Of a stretch of 64,000 nt of DNA, positions 14,201-56,151 are shown piece after piece (within the stretch, counting starts at the first letter, position 1; each line of letters starts with the position of its first letter). The translations under genes were made by a program, and so were the position numbers. The stretch spans positions 4,464,001-4,528,000 of the forward strand of contig OZ038379.1 in NCBI GenBank assembly GCA_964036045.1, read 5' to 3'. Origin of the DNA: Eutreptiella sp. 'Long Island Sound 2002' (Eukaryota; Protista; Euglenida). The notes beneath the pieces are model-generated. The model was not told the DNA's origin, did not search any database, and saw only the letters and a list, made by a program, of their open reading frames with translations.

Positions 14201-15700
14201 CCAAGCACCAGGAGCAGGTCATTATGTTTTTCAGTTCTCTGCAGGTCTTCCTCCCAGTTTTTTTTTTGCGCGTGTTTTTCATAATAGCTCAGGCCCTGGA
14301 AATCCTCCATGGTTGCGGAAGTGTCAGGCACTGTTCAAGTGTCCTTGACTCCCAAAACCTTGCGGGTCTGTACTGTTGGCAATTCTGGCAGCAGGGTCTG
14401 CTGATGCCACACGAGGAAATTACGCAGTGTATGGTCTCTGGTGGGTGGTCTCTGTGCTATTTGCTTTGATGTTTTCCTTTTTTCTGGAAATTTCATATAT
14501 TTTCTGTGGTTTTTGCGACGGGCATCCATTTCCCGACCTATTGTAGTATGAGACTCTTGTAGTCTCGGTGTGTGGTTGGTTGCCAGACCCTCGGTGACGC
14601 CAATTTTTCTTTGCACTCCGCCACTACTCACTCTGTGGGTACCATTTGGCCCGCTGCATCTCCATCTCTTGGGTGTGAGCAGCTCTCAGATTTGCACTTG
14701 CGTACTTGCAGCTTTAAAGTCTGCAAGACGCCCTGGATTGGAATATCCTGCAGGACCTGACGGAGTGGTCCCTCTGTGGCGTTCCCCCTCCCTCCCCGGA
14801 TGCACACACGTCGTCTGCTGATGTGTTACGGTGTCTCTTTTTTTTTCTGAGTCTCAGAACCAGGACAGCACCTAAGTGTTCCTGAACCCTCCACCCTGAG
14901 TCCAAAATCTTGGGGTTACGGTCATCTGTCACCGGTTGTTGAATCTCTGTCCTGTTACGGGTATTATTTAGTGATGTTCCTGTAAAGTCTGCAATGCATA
15001 TATGCCTTCGAGAGCTGCTGGCTTGCACCTAATGTACTGACGTAAGTAGATATCTATGATGGACGTCTCTAACTCTCAGCTGAGAGGAGCATTTGCCTGT
15101 GCTGGTAAATGGTATCGTTCATCCTGCAGTCGCACTGCAACTGCTGGTGGTCAATTCTCTCATGTTTTGGGTATTATTTGTGTTGTGGCTTTCAAAGTCT
15201 GCAATGCACATGTGCCTTCGAGAGCTGCTGGCTTGCACCTAATGTACTGACGTCAGTACACATCTATGATGGATGTCTGTACCTCCCAGCTGAGAGGACC
15301 ATCTGCCTGTGCTTGTGAAAGGTATTATTTATGCTGCGGTTGTAGCACAGAGGCTGATTGTCAATTTTCTCATGTTCTGGGTATTATTTGTGTTGTAGCT
15401 TTGAAGTGTGCAATGCACATACACCTTCGAGAGCTGCTGGCTTGCACCTAATGTACTGACGTAAGTAGATATCTATGGTGGACGTCTCTAGCTCTCAGCT
15501 GAGAGGAGCATTTGCCTGTGCTGGTAAATGGTATCGTTCATCCTGCAGTCGCACTGCAACTGCTGGTGGTCAATTCTCTCATGTTTTGGGTATTATTTGT
15601 GTTGTGGCTTTCAAAGTCTGCAATGCACATGTGCCTTCGAGAGCTGCTGGCTTGCACCTAATGTACTGACGTCAGTACACATCTATGATGGATGTCTGTA
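8241..15700 (+). repeat. Tandem array A: about 5 units of 1471-1475 bp, each with three ~210-bp internal sub-repeats
   Basis: Equivalent ORF ends recur at 8443, 9918, 11391, 12864 and 14335. The core gagagctgctggcttgcacctaatgtactgacgt recurs every 210 bp, three times per unit. Confidence 0.97.
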
Positions 15701-22438: not shown

Positions 22439-24686
22439 ACATTGCAGGTGATAATGGTTGAAGGATGAAAGGTATGCATGTGTCTACCCAAACATATATG
22501 CCCTCTCCCTCACTTCTCGGGTTTTGACATGTACAACAGCAAAGGTCTGTAGGTCTAAACAAGCAGTCAACATTCAGATTAGTCGTATCGATTCTTTTGG
22601 CCGGATCCGGCCAATGTCTCATTCTCTTGTTCGGTACATGACCACAGAAAGAAAGTTGTGTTTTCTGACGTCGGTTTATTCACGGGTGTGATTCAGGGCT
22701 ATTCTAGTCACGTCGCTCCACCATATACCTCCAGTCGCATCTTGAAAAATATATCCGTATGATGTGCTATTCAGATATCTCGCAGTATTGGACTTGTAAC
22801 ATCACTCGGAACAAAACACCCCAGTCAAATCACGACACATATGTTTGGCCGGATCCGGCAAAAGCGTTCTATGTTCGTTTTTGAGATTTCCCCCCCAAGG
22901 GTCTCATACATGGTCATTTCTGAAAAACACTGATCCTCCAAATTATTGGGAAAACCTCCAGTATTCAATGAAGAGCTCATTTACGTCAAATATTTTCTAA
23001 AAAATTTTCCGGCGAAAAATCCGGCGAAACGCAAAACGGACCGTCGAACACTGATATGGCACCTTTTGTGGCTAGCTGTACGCATTGACGTCCCCAAGAC
23101 ATTGGGGTATGTACCTTTAGAGATGAACCCTGCAGACCCCATATCCAGATGGCCTAATTTTGTGGGAGCCAAAGATATAATTGTGCAAGCACGTGCCAGA
23201 CTGGCCTTGTATGAGGCCCTTGCGCGTCGTGATTCCTGGGCACGGTGGGTGGTAGGGATAAAGCTATGTCTTACCCGTCATGATTTTCTTTTCCATGCAG
23301 TGTGTTTACATGAATCATTGTTCTGTGTCTTCGAGGGGCTTACGGGTCGGACGGGGCACAGCCAGACGGCAAGCTAAGCAAAACTAAAGGTTAGCAAGAA
23401 ACTTTAGTTTTGCCTCGGCGGGGGAGGGGTGGGGGTGGGGGGTACACACAGTACAGACAAACCACGTCTCCCTGTGTTCTGATAGTTTGATGATTTCTAT
23501 TGCTGCTGCCCAGGGGGACGGCAGATCTACGGGAAGGCACGCCATGAGGGTTACGCATATCTCCCCCCTTTTTTCGGTAGTTGGGTTTTTACGCCATTTG
23601 AAGCATGATGTTTTTGCCACATGGTTGTACATGGTGACTCCAATTCCTACCAAGCCGAACTTCCTACCAAGATAGCCAGACTGCAACCAAGATGACCTAA
23701 ATTCCTACCAAAATGGCCCCATGATGGAGAGATAAGAATTTGCATGGGCATGACCTTAAAATGAGGAGACACTCCTGTTTGCACCCTTGCGGTCACCAAC
23801 AATGACCCACACAACCAAAAACATTTCCACCACAAAGAAGTAAATAACCCCCCCCTTTTTTTAATTTTCAGAGTTCTGTGCCAAACCTCATGGTGTCACA
23901 CTTCGCGGGTTTGCCCCCCCCCACCCCCGCTGCTGCCGCCTTCGGTGTGACATATGCCCGCACTACTTCGCGCCACTCAAAAGACCATTTGGTCTGGCGC
24001 AGCCATATGTGTATGGCTACATACTGTCCGTCAGGAACTCAAGACCCATACAGTGTGCTTACATGAATCATTGTTCTGTGTCTTCGAGGGGCTTACGAGT
24101 CGGACGGACCGCACCCAGACGGCAAGCTAAGCAAAACTGCAATCTTTCAGAGTCGGTACCAGTAACTATCGGCCCGCCTGGAACTTTAATGTTCACTTTT
24201 ACGGCCCAGTTATAATGCGCACCATCCGCCGCAAAGGACTGCACAGACACAGCCACCAGCACAGCACTGTGCAGTCCATACTCCAACGGCAACGTCTCTG
24301 CAATATGCACTACTAATTATCCCGTCATCTAGATACCTGTCGAAGAATCTTCGGGTTGCAAAGTAGATCGCATGCAATTTCTGAAACAGAATGTCTTTGT
24401 CTTTGTCTTTGTTTTTGTTTGTGACACGATCACAGGACCAACATATGATGCACCCTTAGTTGCTACCCTATTTGCTGAAATTCTTGGCGGCAACTAGCGC
24501 ATAGATGCTGAACACACCTCACTATGTGTACCACCTTGTCTCATGGGACAAGAGAGTGATCTGGAACGGTGAGTAGGCCTCGCCAGCTCACCTTGCGCTC
24601 AATTCAAAAGGTCTTAGATTGAGCATCTGTGTTGGAGGATGCATGCTTTCTGAGTGTGTGCTTTTTTTTTTGCATCCTCTCAGCCA

Positions 24687-26249
24687 ATGTGCCAGAGTAT
24701 TTCCAATGGCTGCGACAAGAAGCATCACTACGAGTGTGCTCAATGTGGCAAACATTTCCTTTGCCTTGGCCACCTTTATACCCATATGCGGCTTACAAAG
24801 CACATGAGTGTGCACTGTTTGCATTGTGGAAGGCCCATCACAACTTGGAAATCTCGGCTGCGTCATTTCGCACAAACAGGACACTGTCTTGCTAGTGGCC
24901 CATTGTTTGTTGCAGCGTCGCAGATGAAGGAGGGACCATGCAAGCCTGAGTTTTTAGAACGAGTACGCCATCTTGAAGTTTATTCAGATGACGAGAGCAG
25001 CGATGACATCGAAGGGTGGTCAACGCCACCCCAACGGCAGGACCATGAAAATGATGGTTTGATAGGTGTTCTCTTAGCCTTCAGACAAACTGGCCTCAAG
25101 CATCAAACGAGCCTCAAAAGTCTTGAGCGGGCACTGAAGTCTTCATACATGTCTGGATTGAAGCGCATTATGGAGACATATGGCAGTATTGAAGGTTTCA
25201 TGATGCAAAACAGTGATTTCTTTGAGGCGGCACCCAGCGGGAAATGGTGCCTCAAGCAGCCTGTAGATGATGTTCTTCAGACGTTGGTGATGCTGCCCTC
25301 GGTGCCACACACGTTGAGCAGTTCTCGGGACGCTCCATACAGCAAAGCGGTCGCTGAACAGCTTGCGATGGAGCACTCCGGAACCGACAATCACTCTGAG
25401 CATGCAAACAGTGGGGCTTCTGCTGCGGCAGGTACAGTTTCATCCCAACCTTCGCCGGAGCCGTATGATATTTCGGATTTCGGATACTCAAGTGAATCTG
25501 ATGAAGGATACTCAGGAACTACTCTTAACGGGTCGCGCAGCAATAATGAAGGCCCTCTGCAGCTGTTCTGCGACCCACTTTCAGCACTTTGTCGTGGAAA
25601 AGCTCCTTCTGCAAGCTGTGCACCAGTCCAGAAGGAGCAGCTGCACATGCAGTTGGAGCAAGGCTGTCCTCCACCACTGAGCCCACGTGTAAATGGCAGC
25701 CAGAACCCCATGATTGGCATGGGCAAATTGGGCACCAAGTGCAGTATGCCTCTGCGTCCCAACGCTGGCCAGCCCCTGCGTTTGCATGGCGAATATCAGC
25801 AACAGGCACTGCGTGTTCCTGAGCCAGGATCTGCGGTTTCAGCTGTGCCAAATACTGGCAAGAACGGTGACAGCCATGTTGTGCAGGCTGGCAGTGCACC
25901 AATAGCGCTTCATCAGATGGTCAACGCAATCCCCACCACAGATCAGAAGCCAGTAGTGGCCCTCAATTTTCAGATGCGGTCAACTGACTTCAGCAGGGCC
26001 GTGCCGGACGTGGGGGCGGCGCATGAGTGCGAGGTCCAGCAGCTGACGGAGGTGTTGTGGGTGTCAGAAGCAGAAGGGCAGCAGCAGCAGCAGGGGGTCA
26101 ACCGCTTGCGGGAGTCCGTGCAGCGGCTCAAGAAGCGGGGCTGGCAACGGCCGATCCGACGCGTTCAAACCTGCAGCGATGGTCCAACTGGTTTGAAATC
26201 TGCTTCTCAGACCCCCGCTGCCCCTGCAACAATACTTGCAGGCAAGTGA
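24687..26249 (+). CDS. C2H2 zinc-finger protein, copy B (12-bp in-frame deletion, earlier stop)
   Basis: Same fingers as copy A. Lacks ctatcccttcag near 25080. gcaggcaagtga replaces gctggtgaaaatcctga, giving a stop at 26247-26249. Confidence 0.55.
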   Translation: MCQSISNGCDKKHHYECAQCGKHFLCLGHLYTHMRLTKHMSVHCLHCGRPITTWKSRLRHFAQTGHCLASGPLFVAASQMKEGPCKPEFLERVRHLEVYSDDESSDDIEGWSTPPQRQDHENDGLIGVLLAFRQTGLKHQTSLKSLERALKSSYMSGLKRIMETYGSIEGFMMQNSDFFEAAPSGKWCLKQPVDDVLQTLVMLPSVPHTLSSSRDAPYSKAVAEQLAMEHSGTDNHSEHANSGASAAAGTVSSQPSPEPYDISDFGYSSESDEGYSGTTLNGSRSNNEGPLQLFCDPLSALCRGKAPSASCAPVQKEQLHMQLEQGCPPPLSPRVNGSQNPMIGMGKLGTKCSMPLRPNAGQPLRLHGEYQQQALRVPEPGSAVSAVPNTGKNGDSHVVQAGSAPIALHQMVNAIPTTDQKPVVALNFQMRSTDFSRAVPDVGAAHECEVQQLTEVLWVSEAEGQQQQQGVNRLRESVQRLKKRGWQRPIRRVQTCSDGPTGLKSASQTPAAPATILAGK

Positions 26250-28377: not shown

Positions 28378-31300
28378 GTTCTTCTGTCACACGGAGAGGC
28401 CCCTGTATCAAGAGCCTGGTGAATGGTGCTATGATGGCGTGTGCCAAGCACCAGGGGCAGGTCATTATGTTTTTCAGTTCTCTGCAGGTCTTCCTCCCAG
28501 TTTTTTTTTTTTGCGCGTGTTTTTCATAATAGCTCAGGCCCTGGAAATCCTCCATGGTTGCGGAAGTGTCTGGCACTGTTCAAGTGTCCTTGACTCCCAA
28601 AACCTTGCAGGTCTGCACTGTTGGCAATTCTGGCAGCAGGGTCTGCTGATGCCACACGAGGAAATTACGCAGTGTATGGTCTCTGGTGGATGGTCTCTGT
28701 GGTATTTCCTTTGATGTTTTCCTTTTTTCTGGAAATTTCATATATTTTCTGTGGTTTTTGCGACGGGCATCCATTTCCCGACCTATTGTAGTATGAGACT
28801 CTTGTAGTCTCGGTGTGTGGTTGGTTGCCAGACCCTCGGTGACGCCAATTTTTCTTTGCACTCCGCCACTACTCACTCTGTGGGTACCATTTGGCCCGCT
28901 GCATCTCCATCTCTTGGGTGTGAGCAGCTCTCAGATTTGCACTTGCGTACTTGCAGCTTTAAAGTCTGCAAGACGCCCTGCATTGGAATATCCTGCCGGA
29001 CCTGACGGAGTGGTCCCTCTGTGGCGTTCCCCCTCCCTCCCCGGATGCACACACGTCGTCTGCTGATGTGTTACGGTGTCTCTTTTTTTTTTCTGAGTCT
29101 CAGAACCAGGACAGCACCTACGTGTTCCTGAACCCTCCACCCTGAGTCCAAAATCTTGGGGTTACGGTCATCTGTCACCGGTTGTTGAATCTCTGTCCTG
29201 TTACGGGTATTATTTAGTGATGTTCCTGTAAAATCTGCAATGCATATATGCCTTCGAGAGCTGCTGGCTTGCACCTAATGTACTGACGTAAGTAGATATC
29301 TATGATGGACGTCTCTAACTCTCAGCTGAGAGGAGCATTTGCCTGTGCTGGTAAATGGTATCGTTCATCCTGCAGTCGCACTGCAACTGCTGGTGGTCAA
29401 TTCTCTCATGTTTTGGGTATTATTTGTGTTGTGGCTTTCAAAGTCTGCAATGCACATGTGCCTTCGAGAGCTGCTGGCTTGCACCTAATGTACTGACGTC
29501 AGTACACATCTATGATGGATGTCTGTACCTCCCAGCTGAGAGGACCATCTGCCTGTGCTTGTGAAAGGTATTATTTATGCTGCGGTTGTAGCACAGAGGC
29601 TGATTGTCAATTTTCTCATGTTCTGGGTATTATTTGTGTTGTAGCTTTGAAGTGTGCAATGCACATACACCTTCGAGAGCTGCTGGCTTGCACCTAATGT
29701 ACTGACGTAAGTAGATATCTATGGTGGACGTCTCTAGCTCTCAGATGAGAGGAGCATCTGCCTGCGTAATTTCCTCGTGTGGCATCAGCAGACCCTGCTG
29801 CCAGAATTGCCAACAGTGCAGACCTGCAAGGTTTTGGGAGTCAAGGACACTTGAACAGTGCCTGACACTTCCGCAACCATGGAGGATTTCCAGGGCCTGA
29901 GCTATTATGAAAAACACGCGCAAAAAAAAACTGGGAGGAAGACCTGCAGAGAACTGAAAAACATAATGACCTGCTCCTGGTGCTTGGCACACGCCATCAT
30001 AGCACCATTCACCAGGCTCTTGATACAGGGGCTTCTCCGTGTGACAGAAGAACACAGTGCTACAGGAAATTCGCCTTGGGGCTATGGTGCGGAGACTCCA
30101 CAACACAACAATCATCGGAACAGGTAATCATTGACCAGCACAGGCAGATGCTCCTCTCATCTGAGAGCTAGAGACGTCCACCATAGATATCTACTTACGT
30201 CAGTACATTAGGTGCAAGCCAGCAGCTCTCGAAGGTGTATGTGCATTGCACACTTCAAAGCTACAACACAAATAATACCCAGAACATGAGAAAATTGACA
30301 ATCAGCCTCTGTGCTACAACCGCAGCATAAATAATACCTTTCACAAGCACAGGCAGATGGTCCTCTCAGCTGGGAGGTACAGACATCCATCATAGATGTG
30401 TACTGACGTCAGTACATTAGGTGCAAGCCAGCAGCTCTCGAAGGCACATGTGCATTGCAGACTTTGAAAGCCACAACACAAATAATACCCAAAACATGAG
30501 AGAATTGACCACCAGCAGTTGCAGTGCGACTGCAGGATGAACGATACCATTTACCAGCACAGGCAAATGCTCCTCTCAGCTGAGAGTTAGAGACGTCCAT
30601 CATAGATATCTACTTACGTCAGTACATTAGGTGCAAGCCAGCAGCTCTCGAAGGCATATATGCATTGCAGATTTTACAGGAACATCACTAAATAATACCC
30701 GTAACAGGACAGAGATTCAACAACCGGTGACAGATGACCGTAACCCCAAGATTTTGGACTCAGGGTGGAGGGTTCAGGAACACGTAGGTGCTGTCCTGGT
30801 TCTGAGACTCAGAAAAAAAAAGAGACACCGTAACACATCAGCAGACGACGTGTGTGCATCCGGGGAGGGAGGGGGAACGCCACAGAGGGACCACTCCGTC
30901 AGGTCCTGCAGGATATTCCAATGCAGGGCGTCTTGCAGACTTTAAAGCTGCAAGTACGCAAGTGCAAATCTGAGAGCTGCTCACACCCAAGAGATGGAGA
31001 TGCAGCGGGCCAAATGGTACCCACAGAGTGAGTAGTGGCGGAGTGCAAAGAAAAATTGGCGTCACCGAGGGTCTGGCAACCAACCACAGCACACCGAGAC
31101 TACAAGAGTCTCATACTATAATAGGTCGTGGAAATGGATGCCCGTCGCAAAAACCACAGAAAATATATGAAATTTCCAGAAAAAAGGAAAACATCAAAGG
31201 AAATACCACAGAGACCATCCACCAGAGACCATACACTGCGTAATTTCCTCGTGTGGCATCAGCAGACCCTGCTGCCAGAATTGCCAACAGTGCAGACCCG

Positions 31301-33946
31301 CAAGGTTTTGGGAGTCAAGGACACTTGAACAGTGCCAGACACTTCCGCAACCATGGAGGATTTCCAGGGCCTGAGCTATTATGAAAAACACGCGCAAAAA
31401 AAAAAAAACTGGGAGGAAGACCTGCAGAGAACTGAAAAACATAATGACCTGCTCCTGGTGCTTGGCACACGCCATCATAGCACCATTCACCAGGCTCTTG
31501 ATACAGGGGCCTCTCCGTGTGACAGAAGAACACAGTGCTACAGGAAATTCGCCTTGGGGCTATGGTGCGGAGACTCCACAACACAACAATCATCGGAACA
31601 GGTAATCATTTACTAGCTATGGTCTCTGGTGGATGGTCTCTGTGGTATTTCCTTTGATGTTTTCCTTTTTTCTGGAAATTTCATATATTTTCTGTGGTTT
31701 TTGCGACGGGCATCCATTTCCACGACCTATTATAGTATGAGACTCTTGTAGTCTCGGTGTGCTGTGGTTGGTTGCCAGACCCTCGGTGACGCCAATTTTT
31801 CTTTGCACTCCGCCACTACTCACTCTGTGGGTACCATTTGGCCCGCTGCATCTCCATCTCTTGGGTGTGAGCAGCTCTCAGATTTGCACTTGCGTACTTG
31901 CAGCTTTAAAGTCTGCAAGACGCCCTGCATTGGAATATCCTGCAGGACCTGACGGAGTGGTCCCTCTGTGGCGTTCCCCCTCCCTCCCCGGATGCACACA
32001 CGTCGTCTGCTGATGTGTTACGGTGTCTCTTTTTTTTTCTGAGTCTCAGAACCAGGACAGCACCTACGTGTTCCTGAACCCTCCACCCTGAGTCCAAAAT
32101 CTTGGGGTTACGGTCATCTGTCACCGGTTGTTGAATCTCTGTCCTGTTACGGGTATTATTTAGTGATGTTCCTGTAAAGTCTGCAATGCATATATGCCTT
32201 CGAGAGCTGCTGGCTTGCACCTAATGTACTGACGTAAGTAGATATCTATGATGGACGTCTCTAACTCTCAGCTGAGAGGAGCATTTGCCTGTGCTGGTAA
32301 AGGTATCGTTCATCCTGCAGTCGCACTGCAACTGCTGGTGGTCAATTCTCTCATGTTTTGGGTATTATTTGTGTTGTGGCTTTCAAAGTCTGCAATGCAC
32401 ATGTGCCTTCGAGAGCTGCTGGCTTGCACCTAATGTACTGACGTCAGTACACATCTATGATGGATGTCTGTACCTCCCAGCTGAGAGGACCATCTGCCTG
32501 TGCTTGTGAAAGGTATTATTTATGCTGCGGTTGTAGCACAGAGGCTGATTGTCAATTTTCTCATGTTCTGGGTATTATTTGTGTTGTAGCTTTGAAGTGT
32601 GCAATGCACATACACCTTCGAGAGCTGCTGGCTTGCACCTAATGTACTGACGTAAGTAGATATCTATGGTGGACGTCTCTAGCTCTCAGATGAGAGGAGC
32701 ATCTGCCTGTGCTAGTAAATGATTACCTGTTCCGATGATTGTTGTGTTGTGGAGTCTCCGCACCATAGCCCCAAGGCGAATTTCCTGTAGCACTGTGTTC
32801 TTCTGTCACACGGAGAGGCCCCTGTATCAAGAGCCTGGTGAATGGTGCTATGATGGCGTGTGCCAAGCACCAGGAGCAGGTCATTATGTTTTTCAGTTCT
32901 CTGCAGGTCTTCCTCCCAGTTTTTTTTTGCGCGTGTTTTTCATAATAGCTCAGGCCCTGGAAATCCTCCATGGTTGCGGAAGTGTCAGGCACTGTTCAAG
33001 TGTCCTTGACTCCCAAAACCTTGCAGGTCTGCACTGTTGGCAATTCTGGCAGCAGGGTCTGCTGATGCCACACGAGGAAATTACGCAGTGTATGGTCTCT
33101 GGTGGATGGTCTCTGTGGTATTTCCTTTGATGTTTTCCTTTTTTCTGGAAATTTCATACATTTTCTGTGGTTTTTGCGACGGGCATCCATTTCCACGACC
33201 TATTGTAGTATGAGACTCTTGTAGTCTCGGTGTGCTGTGGTTGGTTGCCAGACCCTCGGTGACGCCAATTTTTCTTTGCACTCCGCCACTACTCACTCTG
33301 TGGGTACCATTTGGCCCGCTGCATCTCCATCTCTTGGGTGTGAGCAGCTCTCAGATTTGCACTTGCGTACTTGCAGCTTTAAAGTCTGCAAGACGCCCTG
33401 CATTGGAATATCCTGCAGGACCTGACGGAGTGGTCCCTCTGTGGCGTTCCCCCTCCCTCCCCGGATGCACACACGTCGTCTGCTGATGTGTTACGGTGTC
33501 TCTTTTTTTTTCTGAGTCTCAGAACCAGGACAGCACCTACGTGTTCCTGAACCCTCCACCCTGAGTCCAAAATCTTGGGGTTACGGTCATCTGTCACCGG
33601 TTGTTGAATCTCTGTCCTGTTACGGGTATTATTTAGTGATGTTCCTGTAAAGTCTGCAATGCATATATGCCTTCGAGAGCTGCTGGCTTGCACCTAATGT
33701 ACTGACGTAAGTAGATATCTATGATGGACGTCTCTAACTCTCAGCTGAGAGGAGCATTTGCCTGTGCTGGTAAATGGTATCGTTCATCCTGCAGTCGCAC
33801 TGCAACTGCTGGTGGTCAATTCTCTCATGTTTTGGGTATTATTTGTGTTGTGGCTTTCAAAGTCTGCAATGCACATACACCTTCGAGAGCTGCTGGCTTG
33901 CACCTAATGTACTGACGTCAGTACACATCTATGATGGATGTCTGTA
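28378..33946. repeat. Tandem array B (about 3.8 units) with an internal inversion at 29762-31617
   Basis: Same 1.47-kb unit; 29762-31617 is the reverse complement of the unit sequence. Confidence 0.95.
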
Positions 33947-38020: not shown

Positions 38021-38030
38021 TGTTTCTTAG
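38021..38030 (+). promoter_or_regulatory. Putative (trans-)splice acceptor
   Basis: tgtttcttAG, 36 nt upstream of ATG 38067. Confidence 0.45.
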
Positions 38031-38066
38031 GGTCTACTTTGTCTCGTGTATGGCCCCTTCACCGCA

Positions 38067-40241
38067 ATGAAACGGCGCACCAGCAGCAGCGTGCTGCAGA
38101 CGACGGCGCAGCAGCCGCACCCCAAGGGCTCCACGGTCCTGCCAACCGCAGAGGCCGTGGCGTGGGTGCAGTGCGCGGACAGTCGCGCCAGCGCCATCGT
38201 GTGCGCGCAATGCGCGTGCTTCGTGGGCGGCACGCCGGCGCAGGTCGCCCTCGTGTCCGGGGCCGCGGCCGTGGCGGCGGAGGCCCTCGGTGGCGATGGC
38301 GGGGACTGGCGCGCGTGCCCACTGGGCTGCGGCGAAGTGTTCTGCAGCCAGGCCTGCTGCGACCAGGGCCTGCGCGGCGCGCACGGGCCCCTCTGCGTCG
38401 GGCCCCACACGGAGGAGCACCCGCTGTACCTCTTCCGCATCGCCGCCTTCGCGAGCGGGGCCTACGACGAGTGGCTGCTGGCGGCGAGGGTGGCCGTGCT
38501 GGTGGCGCAGGGGCAGTGCTGCGCGGTGTGGGAGGACGTGCCGCCGCTGTGGGACTTGGTGCCCCCGGATCTGGACCCGGAGGCCGCGGCCGCGTACCGC
38601 GCGGAGACCGAGCGGGTGGCGCGGGAGGCGTGGGCGTTGCTGGAGGCTGGACTGGGGCCGGGGTTCTGGGAGGACGCCGAGGAGCCGTGGGGCGCGGAGG
38701 ACTGGGGGCGGGTGCTGACGTACGTGCTGCGCGCGCGGGAGGCGGTGGAGCGCCGGACGCCCGCGGAGGTGCGGTGCGCGGGGGCGTACCTGTTGGGCGG
38801 TGCCGCGGCGCTGGGGGAGGCGGAGGAGGCAGAGGCCCTGCTGCGGTGCGCGCGGGTGCGTGACGAGGGGGAGGGGGAGGGGGAGGAGGAGGAGGAGGAG
38901 GAGGGGGAGGGGGCGGGGGAGGGGGAAGGGGGGGAAGACGACGGAAAAAGGGGGAAGGGTAGCACCGGCGGTGGAGGCAGCAGCAGCAGCAGCAGTTCGC
39001 GCGGCGCGGCCGGCGGTGACAGTGCGTGCGACCCGGCCCCCGACATCGGCCGCTGGACCTCCGAGCTCCCGGACGACGTAGCCCTCGCAAAGCTGTTCGC
39101 GACCCCCACGACGTACTTCCCCCGCTTCCGCGCCCTCGCGCTGTATCCCCCCGCCCTCGCGCAGCTGCCGCACAGCTGCGTGGCCTCGTGCGACATCACC
39201 GTGGCAGAGGAGGGCTGCAACCCGGGCCTCCGCGCCTCCCTCTTTGCCGCCCAGGCCCTGGCCCACGGCGACCCCCTCACCGTCTGCCGTGTGGACGTCT
39301 CCGCACCGTACGACGAGCGCCAGGACGAGCTCGCCATGCGCGGCCTGCCCCGCTGCGCATGCGACCGCTGCCGCTTCGAAGGCGGGGACGCGGCGGCGGT
39401 GGACGCGGCGGCGCTGCGGGCGCTCGCGGGCGCCGCGCAGCGCGGCGAGCGGCACGACGACGCCCTCGCGGCGCTGGAGGAGCTGCTGCGCCGCGACCCG
39501 GCGGACGGCGACGCGCTGTACGACCGCGCGCGCGTTTTGGGGTGGGCCGACCGCTGGTCGGAGGCGCATCGGCAGCTGGTGGCCGCCGGGAGGATCGTCC
39601 CTGACCACGCGGAAGTCGCGGCAAAGCTCCGCGAGGCGCGGGCCTACTTCTCCGGCCCCGGGGCCGGCCCCGGCGGCGCGGCGTGCGTTCCATCGGCGGT
39701 GCCGGGCCTCGGGGGCCGCGCGGTGGCCGCGGAGGGGCTGCTCGACCCGGCGGCGTGCGCCCGCCTCATCGCGGAGGTGGAGGAGGCCATGGCCGCGCAC
39801 GGGGGCTGGACGACCGCGCGGCACTACGCCGTGCCGACGACGGACGTGCCGGTGCACCGCGTGCCGGGGGCGCTGCGCTGGTTCAACGCCGTCCTGGAGC
39901 GCCACGCGTTCCCCCTGATCGCGCGGCAGTTCGCGGTGGCCGCCGCCGCGCTGCGCGTCATCGACGCGTTCGTGGTCAAGTACATGGCGTCCGGCGGCCA
40001 GCGCTCGCTGCCGCTGCACTGCGACCAGTCGCAGTTCTCGCTCACCATCGCACTGAACAGCACCGCGGAGTACGAGGGCGGGGGCACGTACTTTGCGGAC
40101 ATCGGGCGCGCCATCAACTGCGACGCCGGGGGGATCATCAGCTTCGACGGCAGCCTGTTGCATGGCGGCCACCCCTTGAGCTCCGGCACGCGATACATCG
40201 TCGTGGCCTTCATTTACGCCTACGACGGCCTGGACGAGTGA
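38067..40241 (+). CDS. 724-aa fusion: split MYND/degenerate SET (SMYD-like), post-SET, TPR-like region and 2OG-Fe(II) dioxygenase (lysyl-hydroxylase-like)
   Basis: CAQC (38202) and CPLGC-x-x-x-FCSQAC...HGPLC (38316-38396). LYPPALAQLPHSC (PHSC at 39168) and GDPLTVCR. CACDRC (39354). TPR-like helices ~39450-39630. FVVKY...QRSLPLHCD (His 40017, Asp 40023), LNSTAEYEGGGTYF, LLHGG (His 40161), TRY (Arg 40191). Very high GC3, intronless. Confidence 0.9.
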   Translation: MKRRTSSSVLQTTAQQPHPKGSTVLPTAEAVAWVQCADSRASAIVCAQCACFVGGTPAQVALVSGAAAVAAEALGGDGGDWRACPLGCGEVFCSQACCDQGLRGAHGPLCVGPHTEEHPLYLFRIAAFASGAYDEWLLAARVAVLVAQGQCCAVWEDVPPLWDLVPPDLDPEAAAAYRAETERVAREAWALLEAGLGPGFWEDAEEPWGAEDWGRVLTYVLRAREAVERRTPAEVRCAGAYLLGGAAALGEAEEAEALLRCARVRDEGEGEGEEEEEEEGEGAGEGEGGEDDGKRGKGSTGGGGSSSSSSSRGAAGGDSACDPAPDIGRWTSELPDDVALAKLFATPTTYFPRFRALALYPPALAQLPHSCVASCDITVAEEGCNPGLRASLFAAQALAHGDPLTVCRVDVSAPYDERQDELAMRGLPRCACDRCRFEGGDAAAVDAAALRALAGAAQRGERHDDALAALEELLRRDPADGDALYDRARVLGWADRWSEAHRQLVAAGRIVPDHAEVAAKLREARAYFSGPGAGPGGAACVPSAVPGLGGRAVAAEGLLDPAACARLIAEVEEAMAAHGGWTTARHYAVPTTDVPVHRVPGALRWFNAVLERHAFPLIARQFAVAAAALRVIDAFVVKYMASGGQRSLPLHCDQSQFSLTIALNSTAEYEGGGTYFADIGRAINCDAGGIISFDGSLLHGGHPLSSGTRYIVVAFIYAYDGLDE

Positions 40242-40544
40242 TGCCTTCGGGCAGCGCCGCCCCCTCTTGCGACGCGTGGTCGTCGGTTGATTTTGCATTT
40301 GTTGTGGGGGGTGGTCCGTGGATGGGCATAAGAACGGGTCCAATTCTTTGGTGGTTTTTTTTGCATACAACAAAGAGAGACGCCTTGTATGCCCAAAATG
40401 CGCAAATATTTATGGGGAGTTCAAATATGCATAAAAAACATGGAAAAAAAATTCACTCCCCTCCCTACCCTCACCCGGCCGGGTTCCTCATGTGTCACTC
40501 GTCACTCGTCACTCGAGGGGGACGGCCCGGACAGCGCGTGGAGG

Positions 40545-40900
40545 AGCAGGGCACCTGGGCCGCACAGAAACACAGCGAGGCAGGCTATGGACGGCCTGTG
40601 GACAGAGGCGCGTGGACAGCAAAAGCAGTCAAACGACCCCGGCAACAACCAGCACATCCTCAATACGCCAACTACTGGGCGCCGCTGACGCGCCAACGGC
40701 ACATCCCGCCACATTCAGCACAGCCCCAACACACCAACCACTGGGCTCCGCGAACGCGGAAACGACACCAGCAAGAGCACCGGCCGCAGCGGCCGACAGA
40801 AAGCAGCGACCCGACGCAACATGCGAAGGGAAGAACGGGTGACCGTCCAGGGCCCCGTAAAGGAGCAACAACCAGACGGAATGTCACACAGGGGGGGGGG
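40545..40900 (+). mobile_element. Interspersed repeat ending in gtcacacag + poly-G
   Basis: Its 3' part gaccgtccagggccccgtaaaggagcaac...gaatgtcacacaggggg has diverged relatives ending at 60205 and 60909. It resembles, from memory only, a high-copy euglenid repeat. Confidence 0.55.
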
Positions 40901-41607
40901 CTGCCATGTCCTACACTGGTGTGTTCAGAACGGAGGGGAAGCTTTTGGCGACGGCCTCGACGATAATTCGACGGCAGGGGGTTGGAGCCGACGCCGTCCG
41001 CTGGCGTGCGGGGTGCTATCTGCGTCTGAGGGATTTGAGGATTGGCAGGAGCGGGGCCGTCCTGACCATCACACCTGCCATGCCCCCTTCCCTTGAGCCC
41101 CCAAAACACACCCTGACCCGGAGATAGTGACTGCCTCTTCAACTCTCAGCGTCCCACCCGACTGCTCCACCACCATCACCCCCTCCCCCTGTGGACAGCC
41201 CCCCCCCCCCGTTGCACCAGCGTCGGATGGGTCTGGACAGGTGGCCGCCTCCACCATCAGGAATCGCTTCGGTGGATGCCCCTCCCGGGGAAGGTGCGAT
41301 CCGGATGGGGCAGCAGTACCACTGCCATCACATTTGGAGCTGCGGTGAGTGTGATGACCTCTGGCAATTCTCACTAGCCTCGAGTCCTACCAAGCAGATC
41401 CTGTCCAGGCTGTGCTCTGGTGGCTTGGCCCTGACCGCGTAGTGTGGCATCGTGTCTCGGACTGTGCACCACTGCCCACATGACGCCAACAGGACAGCTG
41501 CGGCTGTTGTAGTAGCAAGACTGCACCTGCTTGGGATCGAGCGCGGATGCTCCGCTGACTGCATTGTGTAGGGCCCCCAGTGCCCCCAGTCAGGACCACG
41601 AGTTGAC

Positions 41608-41610
<3 letters not shown>

Positions 41611-41702
<92 letters not shown>
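41611..41702 (+). repeat. (TG)46 microsatellite
   Basis: Perfect dinucleotide run. Confidence 0.98.
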
Positions 41703-50100: not shown

Positions 50101-52540
50101 AGCCAAAGCACAGTCAGCAACCACCTGGTGTGGTACAGAACTGGTCTGCGCTGCAGTGCAGCAAGAAAAACACTGAACAATGTGGTTATGACCATGCGCC
50201 TGTGACACGGGGGCGTATGCGAGCCCAGTTTCCGTTGCCTCATGGCCCCATCACCCGAGGCATTCCCATGGCACCAGGCTGCTTATCCTTTCGTTCACAT
50301 GATGAAGCACCCGGAATACTTCCCGACCCCCGTGTGAGAGCGGTTCAGGTCTTGGTTTGGCAAAATTGGTCTCTCCTATGAGCCGAGGCACCTCCCCTCT
50401 ATACAACTCGGTATGGTAAGAACTGCCTCCCTCTCATTCATTGCTTGGGCGGCCAAAGCATTCTCATTGTTACGCAGACAGGCACCGCTTGTCAAGCCCC
50501 CAGCGAAAGTAAGTGAACTGCTGATATGGCAAAATGTTTTCTGTTGCAATGGACACAGACACATGTACTACTGTTCCCCCCTCATCAGTCAAGGAGTCAC
50601 AACATGGGGAGCATTCTTCGGAGAGCATCACCCACGAAACCACTGCACGCTTCCTCGAACTTGGAAGCCTGTCTACAGTGCGGCACACCGAATCTTAAAC
50701 ACGGCCACATCGCCGGAAATTTTTGACGTGCTGGACACATGGGCCCTGTGTTGGGGAAAAGGATTTTTCCTAAAATTTGTCAGCCCAGACCCAGACACAC
50801 CAAAACAAAAGCCAAACTGGGTCTGGGAGGAATGGGTCAAAGCAAAACTCCACCCGACAACCAAGGAATTTGTGCAGCGGGCTGTGTGGCATAAACTCAT
50901 GGTCCATGACTGCATTTTTACACTCACAGGCACCACCAATTGCCCCCTCTGTAGAAAAAAGAAAGCTGTAAGGCACGCTCTCTCGGAATGCAAAATTTAC
51001 CCTCTGATTTTTGACTTTTTAAATAAATCACTAGTTGTGCCTCGTCTCAACTTTTGTTTGCGTCTCCAATGTTTAGGCAGTTTTCCTGTCTTGTCTTTTC
51101 CTGTCCTGTCCCAAGTCCTGTGCAGTTTTCTTGTGCTCTGCTTGTGCAAACTTGGGGCCCCACCAAGTCCCTGGGATCAGTGGACGACCCGGATGATCAT
51201 AGCACAAGTCCCTTGAATGTTAAAGGCATGGCCTAGCCTGGCCGTGAGTTCCACTCACTCACAGAACACGTTGGCCAACTCCTCTGGGTGGCACGAGAGG
51301 CCCACTGGGCATTGCGGTGGCACACCAAAGAGGGGGGGGGGGGGTCGCAACATTGCAAAAATTCTTGACAATATGGGTTGGCATGCTAGCAAAGTGGACC
51401 TCCGTACCAAAGGGGGGGGGGGGGGCAAACCAAATGGCGTGACTGGATCGAGCGACTGAGACTCTCCATCCATGACAGCGTGAAGCACCCAAGGGGGCTG
51501 TGGCAAGCCCCGCCCCCCATGGAGGGCTCTAGGAGAAATGGGGTGATGTAGGGGGTAAGACATGACATAGAAGCAACGGTCACGGTGCACTGCCACGAAT
51601 TGCCTTCCAAGCGGGCAAAAAAACAATCAAACGCGGAATTTGCAAGCCAGCAGGTTGCGGCGGCAGCAGAGGTTGGTATATGTGGATGGCTCGTCCAAAT
51701 CATTATGGAAGGGAAGTAAATACAGGGCGGGGGGAATTGGAATCCACTCACAAGAGGACACACAAACAGGAAAAATCAGCATATCGGAACCGCTACCACC
51801 GGACCTCCGGCAAACCAATAACGTAGCGGAACTCTGGGGGGGGGGGGGGGGTACAAGTTCTGAAAAGAGTACCGGGGGATACACAGGCCATTTTGTCGGA
51901 CTCGAACTATCTGATCTTGGGGGCACGGGGACATGTTCACTCATGGCGTGAAACGTCGTGGACCGGCCCAGGGGGGGGAATGATCAACAACATCTCAATC
52001 CCGGAAAAACTGCTTTTGGAAATTTTGGAAATGGAACGACCAAGCAGAATTCTGAAGTGGATCTATGTGCCGGGGCACGCAGGTTTAGAGGGAAATGACA
52101 CAGCGCACAGACAGGTAGTGGAAGGAATGTGCCTAATCACACTGTGGGCGCTGCCATGCACAGCCTTTTCACGAATGACAGATGACACACAAACAGCCTA
52201 TGAACAATCGCCCTGCCTTGCAGCGACCCCACCCCCGGAAAATATATATGCGGTGCAGGAAACCACTGTGATTGGGGTGGAGGACAGCACAGACAGCTCG
52301 CCAAACGATCGCCCAGGGGCCATATGGCTATCGCTGGGCTTGGTTGAAATGGGTGAGCCAGAAGAGGGGGCATCCCAGGAACATGAAGCCACAACGACGG
52401 GCTTACTCCACTGTGGTACTTCGAGCACTGATGACAGTAAGCCGTATGGATGGGCAGAGGGAACCGATTACAGCACTGATGTCGGCGACACTAACAAAAA
52501 GAAGACCATGGCCAGTAAGAACAACAAAAAGAGGCCCCCC
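47150..52540 (+). mobile_element. Decayed non-LTR retrotransposon (LINE) ORF2: RT, Cys/His knuckle, RNase H (boundaries approximate)
   Basis: SPGVDGIPAEIL, LRPIAL, PEQTGFIKNRSI and SIDFRNAFPTMSH (48586-49146). PLSPALF and YEDD (~49290-49395). INLQKT and LGIRLG. CPLC...HALSEC (~50940). VYVDGS, RQTNNVAEL, SDSNY and WIYVPGHAGLEGN (51670-52100). Many stops and frameshifts. Confidence 0.88.
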
Positions 52541-53099
52541 CCCCTTACTGGGGAAAGGGGGGTGGCCCAGTCTGGCCCAAGCTTCCCTCTCCCGCGCTTC
52601 ACTTAGGCGCAATCCATAAGTACTAAGAGTGATGTGATGCAAGCCCCACCCCCCACGGAGGGATCTGAGTCGGACTTCTCCACAAAACTCGGTGGCCAAG
52701 AATATAAAAATCGACAGGAATCACCGACAGAGAGGTAGCACATAAGCATAGTAGCACAACACCCAACGTCAGTCCTCCAGTCGGGGGTTCAAGGATGGTC
52801 GGGAAGCCCCGAACGTCCCGAACTCCCTAACAGGACACTTTGAAGGTAGGAGGACAAATGCACGGATAATGGACACATTGTCGTGGCACTATAGCGGACA
52901 ACCACCCAGCCCTGGGTTCCCTGGAGGTAAGTTCGAACCCTAGGGGGCTCATAGTGGGGGAGTTTGGCGACGCGGTCCATAGATATCTCCCTCCCGTCAG
53001 CCACTTTGTTTTACACTTAAAATTTTGACCCCCCCTCGCAGACAAAGGAAAACACACCGTGAGGAAGGAGCATACGAGAAATACAGTGAGCACACGCGT

Positions 53100-55000: not shown

Positions 55001-56106
55001 CAGAGCAAGGGTTAGAGACTAACCGGCACTGTGGGAGGGTGGTGGGTGCGAGCTGACCCAAATGTACAGATGGCCAAGGCCAAAGCACAATCAGCAGCCA
55101 CCTGGAGTGGTACAGAACTGGTCTGCGCTGCAGTGCAGCAAGGCAAAACACTGAACTGTGTGGTGATGACCATGCGCCTGTGACACGGGGGCGTATGCGA
55201 GCCCAGTATCCGTTGCCTCATGGCCCCTTGCGCAAGCACCGTCTTGTCTAAGCACGGTCTGACCGTCACTTTTACCGAATTTTCTGACCATGGCTTTTAC
55301 GGTCAGAAAGTTGGAAAGAGGGGAAGAGGGGCTGTTTCATGCTTGTGATGAGTCTTCCTGCTCATAACAACATTCTGCTTGGTGCTGCACCCCACTGCTC
55401 TTTGTTTCGGTGTGATTTTCACCCATGACTAATGTCGTTACCCCTGTCTTGGCTGTCACGTACATCCGTTCCACTGGTGAGCATGCGCCTGCCACTATCA
55501 TCGGTCGTTCTACTCGTGGGGAAGATTCCACAACCAAGGAATTACAACTTGGGAGCGCCCAGAGTTGCCCCCATACCCCACGGCCCCGTCAAAACCGCCC
55601 TGTTTTGACTATTGTGCTTAGGGTGAGGTATGGGTAGGTTTTCAGGACATGCTTTCTTTTGGTCCCATGCGTCGCGCGGTTGCACCGCCTTGTCTAAGCA
55701 CCAGGACCCGGTCTGACCGTCACTTTCCTGACCTAGCTGGTGCTTGCACAAGGGGGGGGGGGGTACTTTTGTTGAGGCCTCATTTTGTAGGAGTTGTTGA
55801 TTATCGATCATTGACTAACGGTGAGTGAGGCCTGTCCGGTTTTGTGGAGGCATTTCTTGCCCCAAACCCTTGACCACCCTCCACAACCATCCACAATAGC
55901 CAATTTCATGGCATCAAACCCCAAACACATTTTTGAATTACGGCACTATGTCACCACTACTTTGCGGCCGAAGATCTAAGAATGGTAATGCAACAATTCT
56001 GAAAGATCTGAGGAGGGCACATGAGGTTAATGCGTAGGCGTGGTCCGGACCTGGCCTGGGTCATGTAGCTGCTGCGTTCACCTTGTCACCGACGTTACAT
56101 ACCAGA

Positions 56107-56123
56107 TTTGTTTCTTCTGCCAG
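56107..56123 (+). promoter_or_regulatory. Putative (trans-)splice acceptor inside the old transit-peptide coding region
   Basis: tttgtttcttctgccAG, 28 nt upstream of ATG 56152. Confidence 0.45.
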
Positions 56124-56151
56124 TACTCCCACCACCTGCAAAGCATCGACC

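What the first reader, a model, noticed from the sequence alone, without database searches (positions are those of the whole stretch)
38067..40241. Pseudo-SMYD, TPR and intact lysyl-hydroxylase-like dioxygenase in one protein
Seen: a MYND finger interrupting a SET domain plus post-SET CxCxxC, then TPR-like helices, then a 2OG-Fe(II) domain with complete HxD...H...R. Known: active SMYD methyltransferases need NHSC (Asn binds SAM) and the Tyr of ELxISY. Here these read PHSC and LTVCR, while the oxygenase motifs (FVVKY, HCD, LN..EYEGGG, TRY) closely follow the PLOD lysyl hydroxylase domain. Inference: the SET module is catalytically dead and may act as a lysine or peptide reader that presents substrates to an active hydroxylase or demethylase, i.e. 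a writer converted into an adaptor for the opposite chemistry. I do not recognise this architecture as described.
Basis: partly seen in the sequence, partly recalled or inferred. Interest (0 to 1): 0.75.

Follow-up and report, generated by a model that had tools for sequence, protein, structure and literature searches.

The report
Dead SMYD scaffold fused to lysyl hydroxylase
This Euglena gene encodes one protein in which a lysine-methylating enzyme fold that has lost its catalytic residues is joined to an intact collagen-type lysine hydroxylase. It belongs to a large algal protein family on which I found no published study.

Summary
Window 38067-40241 (+) is one intronless 724-codon ORF: GC 75%, GC3 93.5%, in roughly 50% GC DNA.

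The AlphaFold model is confident (pLDDT 87.6, pTM 0.85). It shows three parts:
- residues 18-445: a SMYD-type split SET with a MYND-like zinc finger and a post-SET CxCxxC (SMYD2 Z 15.1);
- residues 446-530: TPR helices;
- residues 536-720: a lysyl-hydroxylase-type 2OG-Fe(II) domain (human LH3 Z 19.4, 30% identity).

Four SMYD3 active-site positions are replaced: N205→P368, Y239→R408, Y257→G426, F259→P428. The glycine-rich SAM-binding loop at the start of the SET domain (N-SET) also appears to be missing.

The protein is not unique. A full HMMER search found 376 representatives at E≤1e-30. Among 77 aligned relatives, the oxygenase H-x-D/H/R residues and the zinc ligands are nearly invariant. 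The canonical Asn+Tyr pair survives in only 4, all in the other major clade. One sister subclade adds a METTL21-type lysine methyltransferase domain.

I found no paper on this architecture. The best reading is an intracellular lysyl hydroxylase aimed at its substrate by a pseudo-SMYD/MYND/TPR module. The adaptor role itself is untested.

A worn spliced leader (19/26 bases) lies just before the start codon, which marks the locus as a processed retrogene. Other agents of this scan reported similar leader-headed retrogenes elsewhere in this genome.

The parts
38021..38046 (+). Worn copy of the 26-nt Euglena spliced leader (19/26 matches). It contains an AG at 38029-38030 that could serve as today's trans-splice acceptor.
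   Evidence: One search found the match. One search gives a chance expectation of 0.025 such matches per 64-kb window on both strands. One search found the exact 26-mer 2588 times in the genome, against 0 for the control. One search shows the flanks do not match SL-RNA genes.
38047..38066 (+). 20-nt 5' UTR. It holds a 6-codon upstream ORF (ATG 38050, stop 38068-38070) that overlaps the main ATG.
   Evidence: Read directly from the sequence.
38067..40241 (+). Complete intronless CDS of 724 aa plus stop.
   Evidence: GC3 93.5%. One search gives AF2 pLDDT 87.6. One search shows it keeps 44 of the 45 columns that are at least 90% conserved in 76 relatives.
38118..38201 (+). Remnant of the N-SET (aa 18-45). 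The glycine-rich SAM-binding loop that precedes it in canonical relatives is absent, and aa 1-16 are disordered.
   Evidence: pLDDT below 50 for residues 1-16. In one search the SMYD2 alignment starts at chain residue 26-27. One search compares it with the canonical member P0095.
38202..38396 (+). MYND-like zinc finger (aa 46-110): C46, C49, C84, C88, C93, C97, H106, C110, with a 34-aa insert.
   Evidence: One search shows the Cys/His columns conserved in nearly all relatives that cover them. One search shows the fold alignment to SMYD2. One search shows Pfam zf-MYND is not matched.
38397..38882 (+). Helical I-SET-like insert (aa 111-272).
   Evidence: helices 119-272, pLDDT above 90. Searches show SMYD2/3 aligned over this span.
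38883..39071 (+). Disordered loop rich in acidic residues, Gly and Ser (aa 273-335).
   Evidence: pLDDT below 50 for 282-323. One search shows an acidic loop at the same place in P0002.
39072..39401 (+). C-SET and post-SET (aa 336-445). PHSC lies at 368-371 (P368 codon 39168-39170), R408 replaces the catalytic Tyr (codon 39288-39290), and the CxCxxC lies at 430-435.
   Evidence: One search gives the residue-level alignment to SMYD3. Searches give the family columns. One search gives the profile match to SMYD3 at E 1e-14.
39402..39656 (+). TPR block (aa 446-530, five helices).
   Evidence: TPR_19 at 26.2 bits against a cutoff of 25. One search shows family-profile matches to consensus TPR proteins at E 5e-64. 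One search shows the helices.
39672..40226 (+). Lysyl-hydroxylase-type 2OG-Fe(II) dioxygenase domain (aa 536-720). Key codons: H651 (40017-40019), D653 (40023-40025), H699 (40161-40163), R709 (40191-40193).
   Evidence: LH3 E 3e-10, motif alignment. (E 1e-21). (Z 19.4, rmsd 2.4, 30% identity). (residues conserved in 76-77 of 77 relatives).
40242..40451 (+). About 190 nt of 3' UTR at roughly 50% GC, ending in an A-rich tract (40433-40451). This is a possible poly(A) remnant.
   Evidence: sequence; GC drop. No target-site duplication was found.

Best explanation
The gene encodes an intracellular protein hydroxylase. It has no signal peptide. Its catalytic part is a PLOD/LH-type 2OG-Fe(II) dioxygenase, so the most likely reaction is hydroxylation of a protein lysine.

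The N-terminal three quarters is a SMYD lysine methyltransferase that has been kept as a folded, zinc-stabilised scaffold: MYND-like finger, SET beta-core, post-SET zinc cluster and TPR. It has lost the residues that bind SAM and catalyse methyl transfer. It therefore most likely serves to recruit and position the substrate protein for the oxygenase.

What is shown:
- the domain folds;
- the intact Fe/2OG residues;
- the replaced SET residues;
- the family-wide pattern of conservation.

What is inferred:
- loss of methyltransferase activity;
- lysine as the target residue;
- the adaptor role.

The locus itself is a processed retrogene. It is a reverse-transcribed copy of a trans-spliced mRNA that still carries a worn spliced leader, and it is now the only copy in the genome.
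For: Folds: one search gives pLDDT 87.6 and pTM 0.85, the latter suggesting a defined inter-domain arrangement. Searches give LH3 Z 19.4 and SMYD2 Z 15.1. One search gives profile E-values of 1e-21 (LH3), 1e-14 (SMYD3) and 5e-64 (TPR).

Oxygenase competence: H651, D653, H699 and R709 are each present in 76 of 77 relatives, together with the PLOD-like VPTTD, ALN and EYEGGG motifs.

SET degeneration:
- maps SMYD3 N205, Y239, Y257 and F259 onto P368, R408, G426 and P428.
- PMC3136521 reports Y239, Y257, H206, G15 and G17 as essential for activity and F259 as stacking on the adenine ring.
- The N-SET Gly loop is missing.
- Only 4 of 77 relatives keep both Asn and Tyr, and none of the 29 in the window's clade does.
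- The zinc ligands H369/S370/C371 and C430/C432/C435 are invariant or nearly so. This fits a fold kept for structure rather than catalysis.

Link to lysine: the subclade P0030/P0032/P0038, in the same major clade, adds an N-terminal METTL21-type lysine methyltransferase domain.

Constraint on the Euglena copy: 44 of 45 highly conserved columns are kept, and GC3 periodicity is strong.

Retrogene.
Against: - No biochemical data exist for any member of the family.
- No transcript evidence could be obtained here.
- The invariant His-Ser-Cys and some non-canonical SET enzymes leave room for residual or altered SAM chemistry.
- I could not inspect model coordinates, so it is not shown that the SET groove faces the iron site.
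- Hydroxylation of lysine rather than another residue rests only on similarity to LH3 (30% identity).
- No target-site duplication supports the retrogene reading.
- At 75% GC, long ORFs arise in several frames by chance, so an intact ORF alone is weak evidence of function.
Confidence: 0.6

Rival explanations
1. The protein is a bifunctional enzyme. The SET half still methylates, using a non-canonical active site, and the oxygenase hydroxylates the same or a neighbouring residue.
For: Four relatives keep canonical NHSC and Tyr next to an intact oxygenase (P0065, P0068, P0095, P0123), so the ancestral protein was probably bifunctional. His-Ser-Cys is invariant. Pro368 and Arg408 recur in the nearest relatives instead of drifting freely.
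Against: Four residues known to matter in SMYD3 are replaced at once, and the N-SET Gly loop is absent. The two sites vary widely across the family. A subclade recruited a separate class-I lysine methyltransferase domain, which would be unnecessary if the SET half were active.
Confidence: 0.15
2. The oxygenase acts as an eraser. It hydroxylates the N-methyl group of methyl-lysine, which amounts to demethylation, and the dead SET recognises the methylated lysine.
For: 2OG oxygenases of other families (JmjC, AlkB) demethylate in this way, and a SET-derived pocket could plausibly hold a lysine side chain. No tool result here speaks directly for this reading.
Against: The domain is closest to the PLOD/LH C5-lysyl hydroxylases (Z 19.4, 30% identity), followed by prolyl hydroxylases. 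No JmjC or AlkB match appeared. The METTL21 fusion in a sister subclade would pair a writer with an eraser in one chain.
Confidence: 0.1
3. The locus is a dead retro-pseudogene, and its long ORF survives only because GC-rich DNA has few stop codons.
For: The locus shows a spliced-leader relic, has no introns and lies in a repeat-rich neighbourhood. ORFs of 300-779 aa occur in other frames of the same stretch. No transcript record was found.
Against: It keeps 44 of 45 family-invariant columns and 82 of 84 columns conserved at 70% or more. There is no frameshift over 724 codons. The codon-position GC pattern is strong at 0.757/0.566/0.935, and the fold is confident throughout. It is the only copy in the genome. 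Meanwhile the leader relic has changed at 7 of 26 positions.
Confidence: 0.07
4. The GC-rich island is a recent DNA-level transfer from a GC-rich alga, comparable to the diatom-type island reported 16 kb downstream in this window.
For: GC3 is 93.5%, against 68-72% for tubulin genes of this genome. The nearest relative comes from a GC-rich marine organism. The nearest Atlas clusters are mostly Chlorophyta and diatoms.
Against: A euglenid spliced-leader relic precedes the ATG, so the sequence passed through a euglenid mRNA. High GC stops exactly at the start and stop codons, and the UTR-like flanks are about 50% GC. Other ORFs of this genome reach GC3 of 83-87%. An older algal origin for the parent gene is not excluded.
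Confidence: 0.05

Closest known systems
SMYD lysine methyltransferases (SMYD2/SMYD3) and the apicomplexan AKMT-type relatives
   Same: It shares the split SET interrupted by a MYND-type zinc finger, the long helical I-SET, the post-SET CxCxxC zinc cluster and a helical TPR-like domain after it. Fold match to SMYD2 is Z 15.1, and to a Toxoplasma preconoidal-ring chain (9ya0_IA, probably AKMT2 of PMC12819142) Z 16.4. The profile match to SMYD3 has E 1e-14.
   Different: Asn of NHSC, the catalytic Tyr, the post-SET Tyr/Phe and the N-SET Gly loop are all lost. The MYND is divergent. The TPR scores as a genuine TPR. A 2OG oxygenase follows, which no described SMYD has.
PLOD/LH3 and mimivirus L230 collagen lysyl hydroxylase domains
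   Same: [quoted passage not shown] It has the HxD...H iron triad with Arg ten residues after the second His, and the VPTxD, FVVxY, ALN and YEGGG motifs. Identity is 26-31%.
   Different: It has no glycosyltransferase domains and no signal peptide, so it is not an ER or collagen enzyme. It is fused instead to a SMYD-like module. This genome separately holds full PLOD-like ORFs with GT_PLOD, GT25 and LH domains.
Collagen prolyl 4-hydroxylase alpha and prolyl 3-hydroxylase (leprecan)
   Same: A TPR-type peptide-binding module sits N-terminal to a 2OG-Fe(II) hydroxylase domain (the architecture is from my own knowledge). The fold of the catalytic domain is related, at Z 16-16.6.
   Different: Identity is only 15-18%. 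The catalytic domain here is of the LH type, and the targeting module is SMYD-derived.
TTLL12 (pseudo-SET fused to a tubulin-tyrosine-ligase-like domain)
   Same: It is a precedent for a SET-like domain without methyltransferase activity joined to a second enzyme-type domain. It turned up (PMC10883266), which I did not read. The domain description is from my own knowledge.
   Different: The partner domain is different, the SET is not of the SMYD type, and no homology beyond the SET fold was tested here.
Relict spliced leaders in dinoflagellate retrogenes
   Same: A DNA copy of an RNA-only leader lies directly upstream of an intronless gene, with an AG inside the relic available for renewed trans-splicing.
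   Different: Here the organism is a euglenid and the leader is the Euglena 26-mer. Earlier scan notes s1-210122 and s1-199772 report the same for other genes of this genome. Those notes are unchecked leads.

Membership tests
SMYD family (SET and MYND domain lysine methyltransferases) | SET fold split by a MYND zinc finger | tested here: met
   VIA-align to SMYD2 gives Z 15.1 with 246 aa aligned over model residues 19-461. Foldseek gives probability 1.0. The C/H columns are conserved. Pfam zf-MYND and SET do not reach threshold for this protein. 9 of 50 relatives match Pfam SET and 1 matches zf-MYND.
SMYD family (SET and MYND domain lysine methyltransferases) | Post-SET CxCxxC zinc cluster together with the Cys of NHSC | tested here: met
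   C371, C430, C432 and C435 are present and are kept in 76-77 of 77 relatives.
SMYD family (SET and MYND domain lysine methyltransferases) | Catalytic and SAM-binding residues: Asn of NHSC, Tyr of ELxxxY, post-SET Tyr/Phe, N-SET GxG | tested here: not met
   These positions read P368, R408, G426 and P428. The Gly loop is absent. The essentiality of these residues comes from PMC3136521.
SMYD family (SET and MYND domain lysine methyltransferases) | Methyltransferase activity | not testable with these tools
   This needs SAM-binding and methyl-transfer assays.
PLOD/LH-type 2OG-Fe(II) lysyl hydroxylase domain | Double-stranded beta-helix with an HxD...H iron triad and Arg for the 2OG C5 carboxylate | tested here: met
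   H651, D653, H699 and R709 align to the LH3 motifs. The fold match is Z 19.4, rmsd 2.4.
PLOD/LH-type 2OG-Fe(II) lysyl hydroxylase domain | Significant sequence similarity to the LH domain rather than to other 2OG families | tested here: met
   LH3 scores E 3e-10 with the single sequence and 1e-21 with the profile. Mimivirus L230 scores 2.5e-5 and 2.8e-17. Prolyl hydroxylases show only 13-18% identity at lower Z.
PLOD/LH-type 2OG-Fe(II) lysyl hydroxylase domain | Full PLOD architecture (two glycosyltransferase-like domains plus LH, secretory pathway) | tested here: not met
   No GT domain was found and the N-terminus is not hydrophobic. It is therefore a relative of the LH domain only, not a PLOD orthologue.
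PLOD/LH-type 2OG-Fe(II) lysyl hydroxylase domain | Lysine C5 hydroxylation activity | not testable with these tools
   This needs an enzyme assay and mass spectrometry.
TPR repeat | Pfam TPR model above its gathering score, with paired helices | tested here: met
   TPR_19 scores 26.2 bits against a cutoff of 25 at residues 462-520. There are five helices at 447-526. Profile hits to consensus TPR proteins are strong.
JmjC / AlkB-type demethylases | Sequence or fold match to JmjC or AlkB | tested here: not met
   None appeared among the Pfam, PDB sequence or fold matches. Tet_JBP scored only E 0.12, far below its cutoff.
Spliced-leader-headed processed retrogene | Leader relic directly upstream, no introns, poly(A) remnant, target-site duplication | tested here: inconclusive
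   The leader relic matches 19/26 bases, against a chance expectation of 0.025 per window. The gene is intronless. An A-rich tract lies 190 nt after the stop. No target-site duplication was found. No intron-bearing parent copy exists in the genome.

The most novel reading that the evidence does not exclude
Across green algae, diatoms, euglenids and other protists, a SMYD methyltransferase fold has been repeatedly stripped of its chemistry and kept as the docking module of an intracellular lysyl hydroxylase. This would define an unrecognised cytosolic or nuclear lysine-hydroxylation system. The TPR block and the METTL21 fusions suggest chaperones or translation factors as targets. It would be a clear case of a 'writer' fold turned into a substrate adaptor for a different lysine chemistry.
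Probability: 0.3. Interest if true: 0.75.

Novelty: new variant of a known kind. Interest (0 to 1): 0.6.

Why it matters
- Lysyl hydroxylation by PLOD-type enzymes is known mainly from secreted collagen. A large family of signal-less LH-type enzymes in algae and protists would point to intracellular substrates that have not been looked for.
- The family is a natural series for studying how an enzyme becomes a pseudoenzyme while its fold is retained. A few members have a canonical SET, many are degenerate, and one subclade recruited a class-I lysine methyltransferase.
- The Euglena copy also adds a clear example of a functional gene rebuilt from a trans-spliced mRNA.

Tried and rejected
- The word-index protein search found only the protein itself and one relative. 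Low-complexity words filled the candidate list, so that near-blank result says little. The full HMMER search then showed a large family.
- Pfam on the window protein gave only TPR. SET and 2OG assignments needed PDB sequence searches, profiles and the fold.
- Rfam found nothing in the window.
- The exact-sequence look-up found no transcript-type record, only a second assembly of the same locus at 99.98% identity. There is therefore no expression or polymorphism evidence.
- The target-site duplication search was negative.
- The leader relic does not come from an SL-RNA gene: its flanks do not match those of SL-RNA genes.
- No leader-like sequence lies within about 1.5 kb of the paralogue or tubulin loci, so the relic is specific to this gene.
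- Record names of relatives (GCA_014466255.1, GCA_977009545.1, ENA and Logan contigs) did not let me name organisms. Taxon range rests only on the Atlas summary.
- Six literature searches for the SET plus LH-type 2OG fusion found nothing on it. Neither did look-ups inside PMC2938197 and PMC5725981.
Full report
**What is there**

Window 38067-40241 (+) is a single open reading frame of 724 codons. Its GC content is 75.3%, and the third codon position reaches 93.5%. The surrounding DNA is about 50% GC, and the GC island begins and ends with the coding sequence.

The genome is 2.28 Gb. The 26-nt Euglena gracilis spliced leader, which I recalled from memory, occurs in it exactly 2588 times, against 0 for the reversed control. 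The host is therefore a Euglena, most likely E. gracilis. The own-genome search found no second full-length copy. Every other hit matches only the oxygenase domain, at 28-52% identity. An independent ENA assembly carries the same locus at 99.98% identity.

**Domains**

With the single sequence:
- Pfam sees only TPR_19, at residues 462-520.
- A search of solved structures gives the lysyl-hydroxylase domain of human LH3 at E 3e-10 for residues 558-716. The alignment carries FVVKY/FVVRY, HCD/HHD, ALN, EYEGGG/DYEGGG and TRY/TRY.
- The same search gives SMYD3 at E 0.003 for residues 357-443.

With a 77-sequence family profile these become 1e-21 for LH3, 1e-14 for SMYD3 and 5e-64 for consensus TPR proteins.

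AlphaFold2 on that alignment gives mean pLDDT 87.6 and pTM 0.85. Only residues 1-16 and 282-323 are disordered. Structural comparison gives the following:
- LH3: Z 19.4, rmsd 2.4 over 173 residues, 30% identity (model 536-718).
- Mimivirus L230: Z 18.4.
- SMYD2: Z 15.1 over 246 residues (model 19-461).
- A Toxoplasma preconoidal-ring chain, 9ya0_IA: Z 16.4. It is probably the SET protein AKMT2 of PMC12819142. That assignment is mine and is uncertain.

**State of the SET active site**

The residue-level alignment to SMYD3 places:
- N205 on P368
- H206 on H369
- C208 on C371
- Y239 on R408
- Y257 on G426
- F259 on P428
- the three post-SET cysteines on C430, C432 and C435

PMC3136521 reports that Y239 is strictly conserved and catalytically essential. 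It also reports that Y257, H206, G15 and G17 are needed for activity, and that F259 stacks on the adenine ring of the cofactor analogue.

The N-SET glycine loop is also gone. Residues 1-16 are disordered and contain no glycine. The SMYD2 structural alignment starts only at chain residue 26-27. Canonical family members such as P0095 have a typical G-x-x-x-G-V-F-A strand ahead of the segment that the Euglena protein retains.

**The family**

A full HMMER scan of 1.84 billion representatives, using a two-sequence profile, found 3904 proteins at E≤1e-3 and 376 at E≤1e-30. Many are 600-900 aa long and match from the C-SET through to the oxygenase.

In 77 aligned members:
- H651, D653, H699 and R709 are each kept in 76 of 77.
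- H369 is kept in 76 and S370 in 72. C371 and C435 are kept in all 77, and C430 and C432 in 76.
- The MYND-like Cys/His columns are kept in nearly every sequence that covers them.
- The Asn site reads P20, R10, S7, K7, Q7, N5.
- The Tyr site reads R22, Y13, W10, K8, L7, F6.
- Asn and Tyr occur together in only four members (P0065, P0068, P0095, P0123). Two of the three I scanned singly, P0095 and P0065, match Pfam SET.

On a maximum-likelihood tree built without the two trait columns, the Euglena protein lies in a 29-member clade (SH-aLRT 95) that contains no canonical member. All four canonical members lie in the other major clade.

Of the 84 columns conserved at 70% or more, 57 lie in the oxygenase domain and only 21 in the first 445 residues.

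The nearest relative, P0002, comes from a Tara Oceans marine metagenome and is 51% identical. It has the same architecture, including the acidic loop, PHSC and TVCR.

The protein-language Atlas places the query next to two clusters:
- 'putative SET domain-containing protein' (SET plus 2OG-FeII_Oxy_3, mostly Chlorophyta);
- '2OG-Fe(II) oxygenase family protein' (mostly diatoms).

**A further clue**

Three members that form a 100%-supported subclade inside the window's major clade (P0030, P0032, P0038) carry an extra N-terminal Methyltransf_16 domain (E 1e-23 to 2e-31). Its closest solved relatives are METTL21C, B, A and D.

This ties the family to protein-lysine modification. It also suggests that the SET-like part of those proteins does not supply methyltransferase activity. 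From my own knowledge, METTL21 enzymes methylate Hsp70, VCP and eEF1A, SMYD2 acts on Hsp90, and TPR domains often bind chaperone C-termini. Chaperones or translation factors are therefore reasonable candidate substrates. This is speculation.

**Mechanism proposed**

The oxygenase is very probably active, and lysine hydroxylation is its most likely reaction. The protein has no signal peptide and no glycosyltransferase domains, so unlike PLOD it should act inside the cell.

The SMYD-derived part is most simply read as a pseudoenzyme scaffold that selects and positions the substrate. Pro368 and Arg408 recur in the nearest relatives rather than drifting, which hints at a new role for the old pocket.

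A demethylase role is not supported. The domain is of the LH type, and nothing resembling JmjC or AlkB was matched.

**The locus**

Directly upstream of the start codon, at 38021-38046, lies a 19/26 match to the spliced leader.
- A first-order Markov simulation expects 0.025 such matches per window.
- The only other matches of 19 or more in the window head two LINE-like ORFs, at 4453 and 24645.
- The relic's flanks do not resemble SL-RNA genes.
- No such relic lies near the paralogues or the tubulin genes.

The gene also has no introns, its UTR-like flanks are about 50% GC, and an A-rich tract sits at 40433-40451. Together these indicate a reverse-transcribed, trans-spliced mRNA, which means both halves were once on one mature message. 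The AG at 38029-38030 inside the relic could be today's acceptor.

No target-site duplication was found, and no intron-bearing parent copy exists. Earlier notes of this scan describe the same kind of leader-headed retrogene elsewhere in this genome. I treat those notes as leads.

The gene's very high GC3 exceeds that of this genome's tubulin genes (68-72%) but is approached by other ORFs (83-87%). Whether the parent gene came from a green alga is open.

**Is the copy functional?**

Long ORFs occur in several frames of this GC-rich stretch, so the intact ORF alone proves little. The following argue for continued constraint:
- The protein keeps 44 of 45 columns that are at least 90% conserved in the other 76 sequences, and 82 of 84 at 70%.
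- It has no frameshift.
- It has strong codon-position periodicity.
- It folds confidently throughout.

Expression could not be checked.

**Novelty**

Six literature searches found no description of a SMYD-like SET joined to an LH-type dioxygenase. Neither did look-ups inside a review of peptide-modifying dioxygenases and a survey of Archaeplastida SET proteins. The searchable library is incomplete, so this is absence of evidence.

Each component is well known, and TPR-plus-hydroxylase and pseudo-SET fusions (TTLL12) have precedents. I therefore class the finding as a new variant of a known kind. It is a member of a large, uncharacterised family, not a one-off.

Noticed in passing
G000 loci L004-L008 and at least 12 further places (e.g. 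C14:33495030, C18:23046947, C19:14939743): Many near-identical intronless ORFs of about 830-890 aa have a full PLOD-like architecture: GT_PLOD at E 2.5e-48, Glyco_transf_25, and an LH-type domain 33-35% identical to the window protein. Their GC is only 46%. The identical scores at many loci suggest a repeated unit, either a segmental duplication or a mobile or virus-derived element. Mimivirus L230 has a similar enzyme.
   Followed up: partly
window 4427-6202 and 24654-26249 (+): Two copies of an ORF of 531-591 aa without Pfam matches each begin with a spliced-leader-like sequence (21/26 at 4453, 20/26 at 24645) and share the same upstream sequence. This fits the leader-headed LINE family described in earlier scan notes.
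   Followed up: partly
window 8932-14850 and 29069-33515: A T-rich motif recurs at a spacing of about 1473 bp (8932, 10407, 11880, 13353, 14824; 32016, 33489). This indicates a tandem repeat with a unit of roughly 1.47 kb. AT skew is strongly negative across 8-16 kb.
   Followed up: no
window 38050-38070 (+): A six-codon upstream ORF (MAPSPQ) lies in the 20-nt leader and ends in the ATGA that contains the main start codon.
   Followed up: no
window 56083-58014 (+): An intronless 643-aa Peptidase_M3 / oligopeptidase F ORF (E 2e-40) has GC3 of 63%. Earlier notes call it part of a diatom-derived island.
   Followed up: no
window 51893-52606 (+): An ORF has an RNase H domain (E 6e-7) and is probably part of a retroelement.
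   Followed up: no
window 40500-41500 and 41590-41700: A C/A-rich stretch (GC about 64%, AT skew up to 0.69) lies just downstream of the gene and is followed by a long (TG)n microsatellite. Its nature is unknown.
   Followed up: no
P0030, P0032, P0038 (relatives, not in the window): A subclade of the family carries an added N-terminal METTL21-type seven-beta-strand lysine methyltransferase domain in front of the degenerate SMYD-TPR-oxygenase body.
   Followed up: partly
L003 (G000:C13:21786968-21790486): An intronless 469-473 aa ORF with GC3 of 87% has a 2OG domain 39% identical to the window protein's and an unassigned 380-aa N-terminal part. It may be a SET-less cousin.
   Followed up: no
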